A stretch of DNA of 63,351 nt, filler included, from Hyphochytrium catenoides (lineage: Eukaryota > Protista > Hyphochytriomycota): NCBI GenBank assembly GCA_900088475.1. It is 8 parts of 8 records of this genome, joined end to end, with 100 filler letters (N's around TTAATTAATTAA, not from the genome) between each part and the next. Parts side by side here need not be neighbours in the genome. Positions count along the whole stretch, not along the records: positions 1 to 15,435 come from FLMG01002382.1; 7 more parts are not named here. The stretch is one strand, 5' to 3'. The stretch's first letter is position 1. The number at the start of each line of letters is the position of its first letter. The notes beneath the pieces were generated by a model. That model had not been told where the DNA came from, made no database searches, and saw nothing but the letters and a program-made list of their open reading frames with translations. This document shows, piece after piece, positions 1,486 through 15,435 of the stretch. The position numbers and the translations under genes were made by a program.

Positions 1486-2557
1486 TTTTCTCTCTCTCTC
1501 TCTCTCTCTGTCTCTCCCTCTCTCTCTTTCTTTCCCCCTTCCCCCCTTCTCTCCCTCTCCCTTGTTCTTTTCTTGTTTCTTTCTCTCCTGTTCTCTCCTT
1601 TCTGCCTCGCTCCCTCTTGATCGTTCCATCCTGTCGACTAAAGAATGTGTACCATGTTGTCTGCCTATGTTCCGAATGACGAATATTATATTTCTGATAG
1701 TTGACTTTTCTAAGCATCCTCCCTCTTTTGTTTCTTTCGCGTTCATGTTATGTTCGGGTTGTAGTGCATACTCTCGTAAGAGTAGTGCTTAGTTTCCCGG
1801 ATGTCTCCTTCCTCTTCTTTTTTGCTCGTCCTTATATTCGTGAAGTAGTACATACTTTTGGTAAAGCTGGTACTTATTTTCCGTTTCTTCTTGGCCTTCA
1901 AAACGGTACTGTGGTAGTTCTACAACAGGACTCAAAGATGTGGTTGCGCTTCAAACGCGTTATAGAACTATTCGAATGCTGACCAGAATAGTTGACTCCT
2001 CTCTTCCTCTATGTTTGGGCGTCTTCTGCCGCCTCAAGAGCATCTCCACCGGGAGTCTCTAAATGAATCTCTATTGCCGCGCTGAAAGCTCTGGCGATGC
2101 TGCTTGGCATCTGCTAGCTGCAGGCTGTTGATGAACGTCCCCTGCCCCATTCTTCCAGGCAGGGTGAGTAGGAGTAGTAGTAGTAGTAGTGGTATGAGAG
2201 GTAAGGATCACGACCAACAAGAAGGTTGTTGTTGTCCCCGGATCCCAGTTGGGCTGATGACGTCGTCGTGCGTACGTAGTAGAGCATTGCAAGGAACCTT
2301 GTAATCAGAAGCATGGCTGATGAGGAACATGCAGCTGACGAACTGAGATTCTTGTCACAATGTCATCCGGTTTTAATGAAAGGGCTAGCGAACAATAAAA
2401 TGAGCTTGAGGCCGTGTTCTGCCTAGAACGCCGGGATGTGAAAGGAGAACGCGCGCAAGGCGCTACCTTTCAGCATTTCAGATACTCGAGAAGCGATCTG
2501 ATTGGTCAACGACTGGGATTCCCGTTAGGGGCTCTATAGCGACAACTCTATCGCTAT

Positions 2558-2870
2558 ATTTGTGTACACAAATACAATCGCAAATAAATATTAGAAGTTT
2601 GTGCAAATATAAATAATTGTACATAAAATGGAGGAGCCTATTTGTGTGCGTACAATCCATTTGTATACGATCCGCCGAGTTTGCTTGTAAACTGACAATT
2701 ATTTGTATAAAAACTATAGCTTCCCATTTGTAGCTACAAATTTATTTGTACATAGAGTGAGCGTGGCTATTTGTATCACACAAATACATTTGTACGCGAT
2801 TAGTGAAGGGTCATTTGTGCTCTACAACTATTTGTCTACTATAAATAGATATTTATTTGTAGGTACAAGT
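2558..2870 (+). repeat. Phased repeat-spacer array 1 (ATTTGT-N4-6-ACAA..-ATTTGTAYA, ~43-bp period)
   Basis: Unit starts at 2597, 2640, 2683, 2726, 2769, 2813, 2855, plus a partial unit at 2558; unique 14-15 nt spacers. Confidence 0.85.
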
Positions 2871-3585
2871 GGACTGAAAGTGCATCTTACTACAAGGGAG
2901 GGGAATGATAAAGAGGCGCCAAGACAAGCGAAAGGATCGGAGGTCTTCATCATCACAGTGTGAATGACGATAGAGAACGCAAGTAGAACGTCAGAGCGAG
3001 ATAGACGGAAGTCCTAGCAGGCCTCAAGCCCAAGACAGTCGACAACAAATAAGGAGATTACATTTTGCATCAATAGTCAAGAGCAAAGAAAAGCAGATAT
3101 GAAACCACCACTGGTATTTAGTGATGAACTCATCATCGAAGAAAGAAGCAAGGCTGCACAACAACATAAGAACTCAAGTGACTAATAAATTCTGTGAGCG
3201 GTTTATTATTATTAGTATGACTATATCAAACTTTCAGTATCAAATGTCTCGCCGTTGGGCTATTATAAACAGTAGTAGTAGGATGGAGCCATACACAGAA
3301 CACAATTGAATTAGTTTTGCCAAACGACGGAGAAGTTTACGAGGGCTGAATGACCAGATGGTGGTAACAAGAGGGGAGGATGACGGAGAGCAAAGTTGCT
3401 GGCCAAAAAGCTCTACATTAAAGAGAGTTTGCTCCTGCTCCATCAGCTTGATATTCCTGAACTATTCATAAGAAGAAGAATAAGGACTTTCTTTGTCTCG
3501 AATCTAAAAGAGGCCAGTTCCAGCTGGAGCTCATCAGTCCAGTTGTTTGACCTTAATTAATTTTAACCCGTCTCCACGCCGCTTT

Positions 3586-3912
3586 ACTTGTACATACAGA
3601 TAAATATTTATTTGTCTGGGACAAACAATTGTACACGATCTTTCACTCACCACTTGTATCGACATAAATATTTGTACATCTTTTCTCTCTGCTTCCTTGT
3701 AGATACAAGTAATTTGTTCCCTAAGCAAGGCTTCATATTTGTAGAATGCACAAATATTTGTATACGTTTCCTAGGGAGTCATTTATAAGACACAAAAGAT
3801 TTGTACATGATTCTTCCTAAGGCCTTACACCATTTGTAAAATACAATTTATTTGTCCACGTTTTTCGCCCGACTATTTGTAAAGTACAAACCATTTATAT
3901 GTCCATTTGTCC
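3586..3912 (+). repeat. Phased repeat-spacer array 2 (same unit and orientation as array 1)
   Basis: Unit starts at 3610, 3652, 3695, 3737, 3781, 3832, 3875; unique spacers of 15-16 nt (one of 23 nt). Confidence 0.85.
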
Positions 3913-4558
3913 AATGTGTGTAGAGTTGCTCCACCGGCAATGGAGTCATGTCCTTCTTTCTTATATAGTAGAAAGTTCTGTCTTTCGCCCTAAAAAGCAA
4001 TTTTGCTGCTGAAACAGAGACAAACTTAGTACAAGATAAACTCAGATCAAGGCCCAAACCCATTGCATCTGTTTCACAAAGTTCTAGTGTTCAAAATCAC
4101 ACTAAAATGAAAACCCATAACTGCCTGCACTAGAGACTGAGAGCCGTCAACCGATAAAGACGGTCTCAGATTTTGCTGCTGCTGATAGACGAGGAAGACA
4201 GGAAGGGGCATTCCCCTGACAAGCGAGCCAGAGTTAGTAGAAGTCAGACAGACAAATACCAAGGTACCATAACTTCAGTTTTGGCTATATATGCTGCTAG
4301 ACAGAGCAAAGAGAGATACAATAAAGCGATAGAGATATCGATAGAGACCCCTGGTAGGAGATGCTCTCCTCTCATCACAACGGTAGCTGTCAAACGCCGC
4401 GAAGTGCATTTTTACTTGCTTTCTTCTTCTTCTTTCTTCTTCTTCTTCTTCTTTGCGTCGTTTGATGATGATGATGATCATCATCAGACAACAAGAAGAT
4501 GTCTTTCTGTTGGGCCGCCCGCCGTGTGATTGTATTGATTGAGGTTGTTCTCTTCTTC

Positions 4559-5465: not shown

Positions 5466-6231
5466 NNNNNNNNNNNNNNNNNNNNNNNNNNNNNNNNNNN
5501 NNNNNNNNNNNNNNNNNNNNNNNNNNNNNNNNNNNNNATAATAATGAAGAGATCTTACTTTCTTCTCTGTTGTTGTCTTTCTCCAGGCGCAGGTTTGCTT
5601 CTTGTCTCCTGCCTGAATCTAGTTTCCTTTCCCTTGTCTTCTTCCTCGATATGTCTTGCTGGCCCCTGTCATCTTGACCGTTGGAAGAGGAAGAGAGAAT
5701 ATAAAGAGAGAGAGACATTCTTTGCGAAGACGAGGAGGCTGAGAAGTATTTAGAAAGGAGAGAGGGGAGCAAAAAAGATGGAGGTTGAAAGAGAGAGAGA
5801 GAAAGCAAGGCACGGGATAGCCGTGAAGCGGGGAGAAAGAGATAAAATAAGAAGAAAAGTTAGAAGATGTAGAGAGATGGAGAGGACCACCAAGAGAGGG
5901 AGAGAAAAGAGGGAGTTCGAAGAGAGAATCGAGAGAGCCGTTATAAATGGTGACATAGGACCATTGCGAGCGGAGGGAGAGAGAGAGAGAGAGAGACAGA
6001 AAGAGAAAGAGAGAACGAGAGGATGCCAAGCTATTAGTCTCTGTTCTCCTTTTATTCTTAAGCTTTTCTTTTTCCTTTTCCGGAGGAAGATAGAGATGAT
6101 GGTTTATTCACAAGTCTCTTTCTTCCTCTTGCTCAACAGATAGAGAGAGAGAGAAAGTGAAGGGGAGAGACGATGGGGCAGCCGTGTAAATTATAGAGAT
6201 ACTCTGCCTCTCTCTTTCTCTCTGTCTGCCA

Positions 6232-6269
<38 letters not shown>

Positions 6270-7631: not shown

Positions 7632-7691
<60 letters not shown>

Positions 7692-7799
7692 TTTGCTCTT
7701 CTTAAGTCGGGAGAGAATGACGGGGCAGCAATGGTCTGTCACCTTATTTAGAGCATCAGACACATTGACGGAAAATGACGGACGTTATTTTCTTTCTTC

Positions 7800-7840
<41 letters not shown>

Positions 7841-8244
7841 ACTCTCTCTCACTCTCTCTCTCTTTCTCTCTCTCTCTGTCTCCCTCTCTCTCCCCGCGAC
7901 CCCCCCGCGCGCTCTCTCTCAGTCTTTCTCCTCTCATCTCAGAGCTTTGTGCCACTTTTTCTCTCTCTCTCTGTGTAATGAAGTTTGTGGACTTTCTCCC
8001 CTGATTCTCTTGATTCTCTTTCTCGTCCCTTCATGTTTGGCCGCCCTTCGTGGCTTATCATGGTCCTGCGGGCGGTGGGCTTCCCCTATTGGTTTTCAGT
8101 CTATGACGTCTTTCCCTTGCCGGGCAGGAAAGAAAGAGAAACAAGAAGAAGAGATAGCGTGGTTTTGGGAGCAGGTAGTAACTCCCTCTTTCCTCTCGTG
8201 GAAATGACTCGGTTTTCATCCAGGCTGCACTGTTGATGAGCTGC

Positions 8245-8575: not shown

Positions 8576-9257
8576 CTCTGTTAAGTTGCCTACCTATCCA
8601 TTAGTTCCATCTACTCTTCTTTCACACGAAAGCAACAGCAACAGCAGGAAACAGAAGAGAACCAGATCTTCAACAGCAGAAAGAACAGGAGCAGATCCGA
8701 CGAACGAGACTGGAAGAGAAGTGGATCCAGACCCTTTCTCTCTTATGAGAAGAGTGCACGATATATAATAAAGAGGAACCTCTCGCCAACCAGAGAAGAG
8801 AGAAACACTGCCAAAGAGAGAGAGAGAGAGATACCGTTTCTTCTTCTTCTTCTCTTTCTCCTCTTTTTCTCTTTCTTTCTATCTCGTCTCCTGCTATTAT
8901 TATCTTTTCCTTAGCAGTAGAACTAGACCGTCTCCCTGTCAACAGGCCATGGCGGGCATGATAGAGCCACAGAAGCTGAACGGACCGGAATAAGAGAGAG
9001 AAAGAAGGAAATAGGCCAGGGAGAGGAACGAGAGAGAGAGAGAGAGAGAGAGATGTGATGAGAAGAGAAAGGCATCGGGGCCTCTCATAACTCTGGCCGC
9101 CTTTCTCTCCTCTTTGTTCCCTTTCCCTCTGCCTTCTTCCTTCGTGCTCCCTCTCTGCCGCTATCTGTTTGAAGTCTGTGTGTCTGTCTGTCTGACTCGC
9201 CCTCTCTCCTTTTCTCTGTCTCTCTCTCTCTCTCTTCTCTCTGTCTCTGTCTCTCTC

Positions 9258-9290
<33 letters not shown>

Positions 9291-11928: not shown

Positions 11929-13014
11929 CTACATCTTTCCCGTCGCAGGCGTTGGATATCGTTTAGAGGCCTCATAGATGGCGCCCCATAGGGCACTGAG
12001 CTCCGCCTGGAAGCTATCGAAGGCCTTGTTATGGGCTTCATAGCTCTGCTTGAGCTCATTTAGCTTGCTCGAGTCGAACTTCTCGAGCTCCTTGGTGGCA
12101 TATCTCAGATCCGGAAGATACATGTTGGCCTTGTCTCTTGGCTTCACGGCGAGCATCAGGGAGTCCCATGACTGCTGCACAAGCGCTGCTTTATCTTCCG
12201 CGCTTTCCAACTGGGCAAAGGTGTCCTTCGTCTTTCTCAGAGCATCTCCATAGCTCTTCAAGAGACCGCCAACTTCTGAGACATCCGTCTCAAAGCTCTT
12301 GACGAGGGCACCTTCAAGAGCTGAGCGGATCTCCTGGACTGTCTTCCCATACCTCTTGTCAAAAGCCTCACGAACAAACTGGTTCCCGCCATCTGCAGCT
12401 GGATTGACTCGCTTTAGCACGCCATCTAGCCTTCGATTGAACTCTCCGAGGACAAAATGAAGGATATAGTACAGCTCCAACTTCTCTGGCAGAGGACCTA
12501 GCTGGCGCAGCGCCAGCGCAATGACCTCAGGGCTGTAAGGTCCGCCCTGTTCTGGCAAGAGCTGCTTCACTAGCTGAGCACGCAGAGCCGCCTGATCGCC
12601 GGTTTCTAAAGGCCTTAGCCGCTGGTCGAGGTCTGACTTCATCTCCGTCACTGCCCTGCCCATCTCCCTCAGAATAGCTTCTTCCTCCTGGGAAAGACCT
12701 GTTCTCCTTATCGTTCTCGGTGCTTTACGAGGCAGGCCTTTGATCGTTAGCTTCTTCTTGACGCTTATCCCTCGAACTTTGCGCGCCTTAGGCGGCACAG
12801 CTGGCGTCACATCCCCAGGCAGAAGGTTCTCAACCGTAGCTGGTGCTTTGAAGCCTGCAGCTTGGGCTGTGTGGCTTGTCAGGAGTAGGAGAGAACAGGA
12901 GAGAGTGATGAAGAAGAGAAAGATGGCAAAGGAACTAGCGTTGCGGCTGCTGCGGCGGCGCCGCTGCTGTCCGAAGAAGAAGACACTGGTCCGTCCTGTC
13001 TGCCTCATCTTCAT
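11929..13014 (-). CDS. Intronless orphan predicted secreted helical protein (361 aa), family member C
   Basis: Intact ORF with a basic leader, hydrophobic FAIFLFFITLSCSLLLL and HTAQA cleavage-like site. Full-length colinear similarity to pseudogene 6323..7575 supports real coding status. Confidence 0.85.
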   Translation of the reverse strand: MKMRQTGRTSVFFFGQQRRRRSSRNASSFAIFLFFITLSCSLLLLTSHTAQAAGFKAPATVENLLPGDVTPAVPPKARKVRGISVKKKLTIKGLPRKAPRTIRRTGLSQEEEAILREMGRAVTEMKSDLDQRLRPLETGDQAALRAQLVKQLLPEQGGPYSPEVIALALRQLGPLPEKLELYYILHFVLGEFNRRLDGVLKRVNPAADGGNQFVREAFDKRYGKTVQEIRSALEGALVKSFETDVSEVGGLLKSYGDALRKTKDTFAQLESAEDKAALVQQSWDSLMLAVKPRDKANMYLPDLRYATKELEKFDSSKLNELKQSYEAHNKAFDSFQAELSALWGAIYEASKRYPTPATGKM

Positions 13015-13478: not shown

Positions 13479-13518
<40 letters not shown>

Positions 13519-13690
13519 CTCTTTCGCGTCTCTCTCCTTTCTTATTTGTTATTTGCTTTCCTACTGCTATCCTTTAAAATCACAAAGCAGCTGCGGCAGG
13601 AGCATCAACCGCAGGAGTTGGAGCAGCCCCGTCAAAAGACAAAAGACAACAGCAACCTCAATTCAACAGAATGAAGGAAGAGAGAATGAG

Positions 13691-13728
<38 letters not shown>

Positions 13729-14207: not shown

Positions 14208-14704
14208 GGAGCATCTCCATCGCGGAGTGCTATTGCCATTTCTATTAGCCCGTTGAAGGCTTCTTCTGCTGCAATCTGACTGGTCTGGTCTGTATTTATT
14301 GATGCGTTAACGGCTGGGGTGCTATTCATGCATCCGTATTGGTGAAAATGAAAACTGCGTTCTATTATTTTACCCTTCAACGGTTACCATCCTGCTGCCG
14401 TTGTGTCATAGAACTACTGGTACTTCTTCATCGCAAATCGCAAACACACATCACCAGTCCAGGGGGTTGACAGTGTATCTTGCTTCAACTCGGGGGAAGG
14501 GACATTAGAGCACACTTGTCCCGTAGTGAACTATAGTCAGCTTTCTTGGAGGGACAGGACAAATAGCACTAGTAGCCGGTACCGCTTGTAGAGTAATTAT
14601 ATGCTATAGATACTCCCAATGAGGATGCCATTTTTGGAGTAGGAATGTAAAATACCGGAAACGGCCTTTAAAATAGCGATAGCACTCCGCGATGGAGATG
14701 CTCT
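14208..14704. mobile_element. Tourist/Harbinger-like MITE (~495 bp)
   Basis: Perfect 25-bp inverted repeat GAGCATCTCCATCGCGGAGTGCTAT (14209-14233) / ATAGCACTCCGCGATGGAGATGCTC (14679-14703). Right flank TTA; left TSD degenerate. Confidence 0.85.
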
Positions 14705-14749
14705 TTACTACTCCTAGAGACTTACTACAACTACTACTCTTCTCCCTAA

Positions 14750-14995
14750 AGGGTTGTGCCACTATTTTGCCCTGCCACTATTGTGCCCACCTAAGATAAT
14801 GTATAAGGGCTGGGTGGGTGGGATCGCACCATGCCTGGCCACCCTTCTTAGAAAGGTGCGATATTTGTAGATTTGCTGTGTTATAACACCAATGGGGCAC
14901 AATAGTGGCGAACAAAGCTGGGGTAAAATGTGCGGTACGGGGTTAGTTGTTATTGTTAGGCTAAGCTCGCCTGGGCATAATAGTGGCACTACCCT
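14750..14995. mobile_element. Tourist-like MITE (246 bp) with TAA target-site duplication
   Basis: TAA|AGGGTTGTGCCACTATTTTGCCC ... GGGCATAATAGTGGCACTACCCT|TAA; extra internal copies of GCCACTATTGTGCCC in both orientations. Confidence 0.9.
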
Positions 14996-15435
14996 TAAAC
15001 CAACCCGCCAAGGACTGCTCCAGGAACCTGCTGCAGGATTACTACTTCCTGGAGGGCTCGTGGGAGAGGAAGACGTGCAGAGACCATCTGCGCATTGAAC
15101 AGATATTCTGCCATAGATAGAATTGAAAAGGGAAGACAAAGAAACTCCCCCTCCACATCTATCATGTATCGCCCGGATCCAGTGACGTAGAGTTCTATGG
15201 ACTTCCTCCGTTGCACCACCCTACTACTACTAGTATGGTACTACTTTTCTCTCTCTCTCTCTCTTTCACTCTCTCTCTCTCTTTCATTCTTTCTTATTCT
15301 CTCTCTCTCACACTCTCTCTGCCGGTCTCTCTCTCTCTCTCTCTCTCTCTGCCGGCGGTCTCTCTCTCTGTCTCTCTCTGCCGGTCTCTCTCTCTCTCAC
15401 TCTCTCTCTCTCTTTCATTCTTTCTTATTCTCTCT

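What the first reader, a model, noticed from the sequence alone, without database searches (positions are those of the whole stretch)
2543..3928. Two same-orientation, 43-bp-phased repeat-spacer arrays bracketing a 0.7-kb core, inside an 8-bp inverted repeat
Seen: a ~28-bp unit of three hexamer half-sites (ATTTGT > N4-7 < ACAAAT, ATTTGT > AYA) recurs about 7 times at 2597-2870 and about 7 times at 3610-3912. Periods are 42-44 bp (one of 51). The intervening 14-16 nt spacers all differ (e.g. AAAATGGAGGAGCCT, AAACTATAGCTTCCC, AGAGTGAGCGTGGCT, GATTAGTGAAGGGTC, GTTTCCTAGGGAGTC, GTTTTTCGCCCGACT). The block is bounded by CAACTCTA (2543-2550) and TAGAGTTG (3921-3928) with no evident TSD, and is nested in the Harbinger-like element. 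Conserved spacing with unconserved spacer sequence is not what recent tandem amplification yields. Inference: ~4 helical turns per unit suggests a phased protein-binding lattice (transposase/recombinase or iteron-like) of an unrecognised mobile element. The two arrays are direct rather than mirrored, unlike the usual symmetric subterminal repeats. The layout is CRISPR-like, but no cas gene is present.
Basis: partly seen in the sequence, partly recalled or inferred. Interest (0 to 1): 0.8.

Follow-up and report, generated by a model that had tools for sequence, protein, structure and literature searches.

The report
Phased binding-site array in decayed transposon
A non-coding, inverted-repeat-bounded mobile-element remnant in an unidentified eukaryote carries about 15 evenly spaced (43 bp) copies of a short composite protein-binding-type site with unrelated DNA between them. 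This is most likely one docking array later split by an insertion, and it is unusual in scale but not a new kind of system.

Summary
ATTTGTA occurs 15 times in the window against 0.8 expected, 14 of them in the block and 13 of those on the + strand. The sites form 43-bp units: a dyad ATTTGT-N4-7-ACAAAT (A), then ATTTGTAYA (B) 17-19 bp later, then the next A at about 25 bp (exactly 25 in 9 of 12). The intervening 15-16 nt are no more alike than shuffled sequence.

The left array ends on an A site without B, and the right array starts on a B site without A. Deleting about 713 bp restores phase and a canonical unit, so this is most likely one array of 15-16 units split by an insertion, not two element ends. 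The 8-bp inverted repeat is near chance (3% of shuffles). Its left copy lies inside a 34-bp segment whose true partner is at 4320-4352. The block sits in a non-coding element with about 47-bp terminal inverted repeats (2037-4367). A 495-bp sibling at 14209-14703 lacks the array.

No transposase, target-site duplication or cas gene was found, and nothing related turned up in any accessible collection. "Harbinger-like" and "CRISPR-like" are unsupported. Best reading: a transposon-borne lattice of binding sites, once constrained and now decaying. Its function is inferred.

The parts
2037..2089 (+). Left terminal inverted repeat (L1) of element E1. It starts AGAGCATCTCC and contains two CTCTA-type subrepeats.
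   Evidence: Local alignment to the reverse complement of 4315-4367 scores 18.5 against 7.6 +/- 1.1 in shuffles, 0 of 500 reaching it. It is also homologous over about 55 nt to the left end of E2, 0 of 500.
2527..2560 (+). Partial third copy (L2) of the terminal repeat, covering the inner 34 bp only.
   Evidence: 28 of 34 identical to the reverse complement of 4320-4352; score 17.5 against 8.2 +/- 1.1, 0 of 500. It is weak against the four-sequence profile, E = 0.2.
2558..2870 (+). Array part 1: eight A dyads and six B sites, 43-bp period. It ends on an A dyad (2855-2870) with no B site.
2871..3583 (.). Interrupting segment of about 713 bp (GC 0.42). It has no TTGTA site, no ORF with a family match and no end repeats. 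The last 43 bp (3541-3583) may be one degenerate unit, which would make the insertion 670 bp.
   Evidence: After removal, A-to-A spacing across the junction is 42 bp and B-to-B is 43 bp. The inverted repeat of its ends is at chance, 458 of 1000. No Pfam match. Composition.
3584..3920 (+). Array part 2. It starts with a B site (3586) with no A dyad, followed by seven A dyads and further B sites, and ends with a lone half-site at 3905.
3921..4314 (.). Non-repetitive internal segment of E1 with no array. One inverted TTGTA-type site (TACAAT, 4317-4322) lies at the inner edge of the right terminal repeat, just past this part, mirroring the first half-site next to L2.
   Evidence: Only 6 TACAA occur in the ~14 kb outside the block, so one at this spot is expected with p of about 0.003 (inference).
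4315..4367 (-). Right terminal inverted repeat (R) of E1.
14209..14703 (.). Sibling miniature element E2 (495 bp) with 33-bp terminal repeats. It has the same terminal GAGCATCTCC but no TTGTA array.
   Evidence: Terminal repeats 94% identical over 33 bp, E = 6e-8. Shared terminus shown. Internal sequence is unrelated to E1.

Best explanation
The block is one phased array of 15-16 composite binding sites carried just inside the left terminal repeat of a non-autonomous, inverted-repeat-bounded DNA element (2037 or 2527 to 4367). An unrelated insertion of 0.67-0.71 kb later split it in two.

Each 43-bp unit has three parts:
- a dyad (TTGT ... ACAA, centres about one helical turn apart), suited to a dimer;
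- a further direct half-site, ATTTGTAYA;
- a spacer of fixed length and free sequence.

Because 43 bp is about 4.1 helical turns, equivalent sites recur on nearly the same face of the helix. A sequence-specific DNA-binding protein could therefore load cooperatively along about 650 bp. That protein would be supplied in trans by an autonomous relative (a transposase or an accessory DNA-binding protein) or by the host.

The most likely role is a one-sided docking or enhancer platform for assembly of the transposition complex at that end.

Shown: the anatomy, the constraint pattern, the phase continuity and the terminal repeats. Inferred: protein binding, the identity of the binder and the role in transposition.
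For: 1. Site enrichment and strict strand bias.
2. Site columns are about 0.9 conserved while spacer columns are at the random level. Spacers are not alignable.
3. The B-to-A distance stays at 25 bp in 9 of 12 cases although the spacer sequence is saturated. This argues for selection on geometry, since neutral decay would add indels (inference).
4. The direct half-sites are only about 7.5% off consensus (7/98 and 7/90 from the rows). This is close to the roughly 9% per-lineage divergence implied by L2 against R (28/34). The sites were therefore probably near-perfect when the element was last active (inference).
5. The left array ends with A and the right array begins with B, and phase is kept after removing 713 bp.
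6. The terminal repeats are significant, and a sibling element sits in the same window.
7. A mirrored TTGTA-type site lies at the inner edge of the right terminal repeat.
8. Only one clean compensatory change occurs in the dyads, and the outer dyad positions are often unpaired. This favours recognition of duplex DNA over a hairpin.
9. Transposase binding to subterminal repeated motifs of a miniature element is documented for Lemi1/Emigrant (PMC1636448, found).
Against: - No transposase or DNA-binding ORF is present in the piece, so the binder is unknown.
- The sibling E2 has the same termini but no array, and the right end of E1 has a single site. The array is therefore not required for this family's ends, and its motif differs from the CTCTATCG subrepeats of the terminal repeat.
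- No convincing target-site duplication exists for E1, E2 or the insertion. The three terminal-repeat copies (L1, L2, R) leave the true left boundary ambiguous.
- The complementary break in the array would arise by chance in about 1 of 10 cases (my estimate, roughly 5 of 43 registers).
- No second copy of the array was found anywhere. Family-level conservation is untested.
Confidence: 0.45

Rival explanations
1. The two arrays are the two ends of an unrecognised mobile element (2543-3928) whose end-arrays are direct rather than inverted, bracketing a 0.7-kb core.
For: The two arrays are of similar size (313 and 329 bp) and flank a distinct core. An 8-bp inverted repeat lies at the outer edges. 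A 48-bp, 79% inverted repeat lies at the inner edges, 2823-2870 against 3586-3633.
Against: The outer inverted repeat is at the 3% chance level, and its left copy belongs to a longer repeat paired with 4320-4352. The inner inverted repeat is built from the palindromic sites themselves. The arrays are complementary halves in phase. There is no target-site duplication and no ORF in the core.
Confidence: 0.1
2. A host cis-acting lattice, such as an enhancer, insulator, origin or tethering site bound by a host factor. It merely lies between, or was captured by, miniature-element insertions. The terminal repeats at 2037 and 4367 need not belong to one element.
For: The array motif differs from the terminal-repeat motif, and E2 lacks it. 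The window is dense in small inverted-repeat elements, so two ends 2.3 kb apart could be independent. The constraint on sites and spacing holds whoever the binder is.
Against: The array begins exactly at the inner end of the terminal-repeat copy L2, and a mirrored site sits at the inner edge of R. No gene with any homologue is nearby. The sites are already decaying and the array tolerated a 0.7-kb insertion, which is not expected for a host element in use.
Confidence: 0.17
3. A neutral, old minisatellite inside a transposon with no function. The apparent sites are the slowest-decaying or most AT-rich part of a 43-bp unit.
For: Head-to-tail units of constant period lie inside a repeat-rich, non-coding region. 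Internal tandem repeats in miniature elements are common (general knowledge).
Against: Divergence is extremely uneven along the unit, 0.9 against the random level. Spacer length is preserved despite saturated sequence. TRF does not detect the array even at score 30, because the units are too unlike one another.
Confidence: 0.12
4. An RNA-level system: the array is transcribed and processed into units of about 43 nt (CRISPR-like or a small-RNA cluster), or the sites act as single-strand hairpins.
For: The layout is repeat-spacer. Array folds are more stable than shuffles, z = -3.05 and -2.6.
Against: The predicted folds pair distant units rather than forming one hairpin per unit. Dyad stems are 4-6 AT-rich pairs with 4-7 nt loops and only one compensatory change. 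There is no Rfam match in the block and no cas or other protein family. The spacers are 15-16 nt and the genome is eukaryote-like.
Confidence: 0.03
5. Iterons or a partition site from an integrated episome or virus. The dyad plus direct half-site in arrays would be bound by a replication initiator or segregation protein.
For: The layout recalls iteron plus operator arrangements and the EBV oriP family of repeats (my knowledge, not tested). An unrelated ATTTGTAGTTA iteron-like array turned up in a metagenome contig.
Against: No viral or plasmid gene is in the window. There is no similarity to plasmids or phages or to viral contigs. No AT-rich unwinding element adjoins the array.
Confidence: 0.05

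Closest known systems
Subterminal repeated binding motifs of class II transposons and their miniature derivatives. Examples are Lemi1/Emigrant (PMC1636448) and, from general knowledge, En/Spm 12-bp TnpA motifs, Ac AAACGG hexamers and Tn7 TnsB sites.
   Same: Short conserved motifs are repeated just inside a terminal inverted repeat, with unconserved DNA between them, in a non-coding element that must be served in trans. Asymmetry between the two ends is common.
   Different: Here there are 15-16 composite units (dyad plus half-site) at a strict 43-bp period, on one end only. The motif is unlike the terminal repeat, and a sibling with the same termini lacks the array. No transposase is known.
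The gypsy Su(Hw) insulator (general knowledge: about 12 degenerate binding sites in roughly 350 bp of a retrotransposon).
   Same: A mobile element carries a dense, same-orientation array of sites for one DNA-binding protein, with variable spacers.
   Different: Gypsy is an LTR retroelement, its sites bind a host zinc-finger protein and its spacing is looser. Nothing here shows insulator activity.
EBV oriP family of repeats, and plasmid iteron or parC arrays (general knowledge).
   Same: Regularly phased dyad or direct sites load a dimeric protein cooperatively. R1 parC even has two same-orientation arrays flanking a core.
   Different: Those units are near-identical including their short spacers, and they sit next to the gene of their binding protein in an episome. 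Here the spacers are random and no such gene or episome context exists.
CRISPR arrays
   Same: Partly palindromic repeats alternate with unique spacers of constant length.
   Different: The repeats are degenerate with variable loops, the spacers are 15-16 nt, there are no cas genes or leader, and the genome is eukaryote-like. No defining feature is met.
Minisatellites inside miniature inverted-repeat elements
   Same: A tandem array with constant period occupies most of a small non-autonomous element.
   Different: Such arrays normally diverge evenly along the unit. Here only the sites and the spacing are kept.

Membership tests
Non-autonomous TIR (class II) transposon / MITE-like element | Terminal inverted repeats | tested here: met
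   2037-2089 against 4315-4367: score 18.5 against 7.6 +/- 1.1, 0 of 500 shuffles. 2527-2560 against 4320-4352: 28/34, 0 of 500.
Non-autonomous TIR (class II) transposon / MITE-like element | Target-site duplication flanking the repeats | tested here: inconclusive
   The 7-mers abutting the repeats, CGCCTCA and CCTCTCA, match at 5 of 7 positions only. There is no clean duplication for E1 or E2 (sequence).
Non-autonomous TIR (class II) transposon / MITE-like element | Several copies sharing the termini | tested here: met
   E2 at 14209-14703 shares the terminal GAGCATCTCCAYCG..GGAGT. Genome-wide copy number is not testable.
PIF/Harbinger | DDE transposase and Myb-like ORF, or derivation from such an element | tested here: not met
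   No Pfam family matched in 69 stop-to-stop ORFs of at least 70 aa across the piece. An autonomous partner elsewhere cannot be excluded.
PIF/Harbinger | 3-bp TWA target-site duplication | tested here: not met
   The E1 flanks are TCA and CCT. E2 has TTA abutting on the right only.
hAT | YARNG termini with an 8-bp duplication | tested here: not met
   TAGGG and CAGGG occur at 2526 and 4353, but they are internal to the longer repeat, and the 8-mers ATTCCCGT and GTAGGAGA do not match.
CRISPR array | Near-identical repeats of 23-47 bp | tested here: not met
   Only about 16 of 28 positions are conserved and loops vary from 4 to 7 nt. TRF finds no array.
CRISPR array | Spacers of about 26-72 bp, adjacent cas genes, prokaryotic or viral context | tested here: not met
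   Spacers are 15-16 nt. No protein family matched. The window is dense in microsatellites and has an assembly gap, as in eukaryotic drafts.
Neutral minisatellite | Units diverge roughly evenly along their length | tested here: not met
   Site columns 0.90, spacer columns 0.445, against 0.414 for random columns.
Described transposon family (Dfam/Repbase) | Sequence match of the ends or the unit to a curated consensus | not testable with these tools
   No eukaryotic repeat library or eukaryotic genome collection is available. The accessible collections gave nothing related.

The most novel reading that the evidence does not exclude
The lattice is not a transposase platform. It would instead be a self-standing eukaryotic site-spacer scaffold: a mobile, phased array that recruits a host or element-encoded protein to build an extended chromatin or nucleoprotein domain with insulator-, tethering- or centromere-like function.
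Probability: 0.12. Interest if true: 0.7.

Novelty: new variant of a known kind. Interest (0 to 1): 0.35.

Why it matters
If the array is a docking lattice, it is an unusually long and regular example: about 15 composite sites with fixed geometry and free spacers. It would show how a non-autonomous element can concentrate a trans-acting protein at one end. Its simple motif would make the binder easy to find. It would also be a ready-made source of a phased binding-site array that a host could co-opt. With a single decayed copy from an unidentified genome, it is a lead rather than a discovery.

Tried and rejected
1. Relatives by DNA pattern.
- Two scans of viral contigs gave only single chance hits.
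- One metagenome scan gave 21 loci, all homogeneous tandem repeats or unrelated iteron-like arrays.
- Two scans of bacterial and archaeal genomes found no terminal-repeat pattern. The array pattern hit only two-unit identical duplicates in a Saccharibacteria MAG.
- Plasmid and phage BLAST found no match.

2. Host identity through proteins.
- The 361-aa ORF gave nothing in the word-indexed search or in 1.84 billion representatives, and exact look-up found nothing.
- A second ORF gave nothing.
- Pfam on the long ORFs and on 69 stop-to-stop ORFs found nothing meaningful.

3. RNA families and tRNAs. No hit lay in the block. All hits were (GA)n/(CT)n hairpins below the gathering thresholds.

4. A literature search for the 9-mers returned only primers and unrelated text.

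6. A 7-bp inverted repeat (GGACTGA) plus an AGT duplication around a 670-bp version of the insertion is at chance level.

7. Arrays as LTR-like duplicates of each other were rejected. There is no unit-by-unit correspondence, and only the two spacers next to the insertion resemble each other.

8. A nested-sibling reading was considered: 2037-2524 as a 488-bp element inserted into the left repeat of the array-bearing element, with an outer remnant at 2018-2031. Matches of 10/14 and 8/15 are suggestive only, so it is left open.
Full report
**Context**

The piece looks like draft eukaryotic DNA.
- GC is 0.47, CpG observed/expected is 0.62, and there is a 72-N gap at 5466-5537.
- It is extremely dense in (CT)n, (GA)n and (TTC)n runs.
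- None of 69 ORFs of at least 70 aa matches a Pfam family.
- The two best ORFs have no homologue in the large protein collections.
- The organism could not be identified, and no transposase or cas gene lies within reach.

- ATTTGT occurs 24 times on the + strand, 21 of them in 2543-3928.
- ATTTGTA has 15 matches against 0.81 expected, and no shuffle of 200 reaches 15. Fourteen are in the block, 13 of them on the + strand.
- The 713-bp core has no TTGTA at all.

Laid out in register, each unit has:
- an A dyad, ATTTGT-N4-7-ACAAAT, whose inner TTGT/ACAA is nearly always intact;
- a B site, ATTTGTAYA, often followed by CG, starting 17-19 bp after A;
- the next A, 25 bp after B in 9 of 12 cases (24 bp in two, 33 bp in one).

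This gives the 42-44 bp period, with one unit of 51 bp. B-site columns average 0.90 majority. Spacer columns average 0.445, against 0.414 +/- 0.085 for random columns. Spacers score no better against each other than shuffled spacers, in either orientation. TRF does not see the array at all.

**Two arrays or one?**

The left array stops after an A dyad (2855-2870) that has no B site. The right array opens with a B site (3586) that has no A. Deleting 2871-3583 gives a junction unit that is 25/28 identical to the unit at 2726. Spacing across the junction becomes 42 bp A-to-A and 43 bp B-to-B.

I estimate that such a complementary break would occur by chance about once in ten. It explains directly why both arrays point the same way. 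The segment has:
- no terminal repeats (458 of 1000 shuffles do as well),
- no duplication of flanks,
- no coding capacity.

Its last 43 bp may be one more ruined unit.

The 48-bp inverted repeat at the inner edges is made of the palindromic sites plus two AT-rich spacers. Those are also the only spacers that resemble each other. I do not read it as a pair of element ends.

**Boundaries**

Its left copy lies in a 34-bp segment, 2527-2560, that matches the reverse complement of 4320-4352 at 28 of 34 positions, with 0 of 500 shuffles reaching the score.

That right-hand repeat continues outward to 4367 and ends in GGAGATGCTCT. The same terminus occurs:
- in forward orientation at 2037-2089 (0 of 500);
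- at both ends of a 495-bp element at 14209-14703, whose 33-bp repeats are 94% identical.

The array therefore lies inside an inverted-repeat-bounded, non-coding element of the same family as a miniature sibling in the window.

Three points stay unresolved:
- Which of the two left copies is the true partner of 4367. The inner copy fits the right repeat better. The outer copy alone has the terminal 14 nt.
- Whether 2037-2524 is a nested sibling.
- The superfamily, because no clean target-site duplication exists.

A proposed fourth copy at 3923 is not significant. "Harbinger-like" has no support in the piece.

**How the array relates to the element**

- The first half-site overlaps the inner end of the repeat copy at 2527-2560.
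- A single inverted TTGTA-type site (TACAAT, 4317-4322) sits at the inner edge of the right repeat, where chance would put one with p of about 0.003.
- The sibling has no such sites, and the internal sequences of the two elements are unrelated.
- The motif is thus native to this element's ends but expanded on one side only. It is not needed by the family's termini as such.

**Constraint**

The direct half-sites deviate from consensus at about 7.5% of positions (7/98 and 7/90, counted from the rows). This is similar to the per-lineage decay implied by the two repeats. The sites were probably near-perfect in the active progenitor, while the spacers were already unrelated.

Spacer length stayed fixed while spacer sequence randomised. 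That is not expected under neutral decay, where indels accompany substitutions. This is the main argument that sites and geometry were once selected.

The dyads show one clean compensatory change and many broken outer pairs. RNA folds, although more stable than shuffles (z about -3), pair distant units rather than forming unit hairpins. No Rfam family matches in the block. Duplex recognition by a protein is therefore the better reading.

**Mechanism proposed (inferred)**

- A dimer binds the dyad; the half-site centres lie 10-13 bp apart, on one face of the helix.
- A further subunit binds the B site.
- This repeats every 4.1 turns, giving cooperative loading over about 650 bp next to one terminal repeat.
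- The result would be a one-sided docking or enhancer platform for the transposition machinery, served in trans.
- Alternatives are a host-factor array carried by or trapped between elements, a neutral minisatellite, an RNA system, or episomal iterons. They are scored in the rival explanations.

**Novelty**

The kind is known: repeated binding motifs inside transposon ends, and transposon-borne site arrays. The scale, the strict phasing, the composite unit and the one-sidedness make this a variant worth a look once the genome is known. No relative was found in any accessible collection, and eukaryotic repeat libraries were not available. Membership in a described family is therefore untested.

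Noticed in passing
14209-14703: A 495-bp miniature element with 33-bp terminal inverted repeats (94% identical) and the same terminal GAGCATCTCC as the element that holds the array. The 16 nt outside each end are 12/16 alike (TTTACT..TAGAG) in a TAC-rich flank.
   Followed up: partly
14749-14996: Another small inverted-repeat structure. The 16-bp motif TGCCACTATTGTGCCC occurs twice in tandem at 14757-14788 and twice inverted at about 14897 and 14973, with 24-bp arms 92% complementary.
   Followed up: no
11929-13014 (-): The longest ORF (361 aa) has a signal-peptide-like N-terminus. It has no homologue in the word-indexed search or in 1.84 billion representatives. A 13-nt match to the element terminus (AGAGCATCTCCAT) lies inside it at 12239-12251.
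   Followed up: partly
2535-2558: A local hairpin, TATAGCGA / 8-nt loop CAACTCTA / TCGCTATA, formed by the two subrepeats of the partial terminal-repeat copy. The right terminal repeat has no counterpart.
   Followed up: no
7633-7892, 6137-6269, 9030-9290, 13481-13727: (GA)n runs facing (CT)n runs form long hairpins. These give sub-threshold Rfam hits to plant miRNA families and a Leishmania Hsp83 3' UTR model. They are low-complexity artefacts.
   Followed up: yes
4447-4499: An imperfect 53-bp palindrome centred on (GAT)n/(ATC)n, just outside the right terminal repeat.
   Followed up: no
5466-5537: A run of 72 N, an assembly gap. The piece comes from a draft scaffold.
   Followed up: no
L082:1560-1830; L139:4740-4860 and L142:4040-4110: Unrelated finds from the pattern scans. 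One is a metagenome contig with about 12 irregularly spaced ATTTGTAGTTA iteron-like sites upstream of an ORF. The other is a Saccharibacteria MAG with two separate 2-unit 43-bp duplicates carrying ATTTGTAG sites.
   Followed up: no
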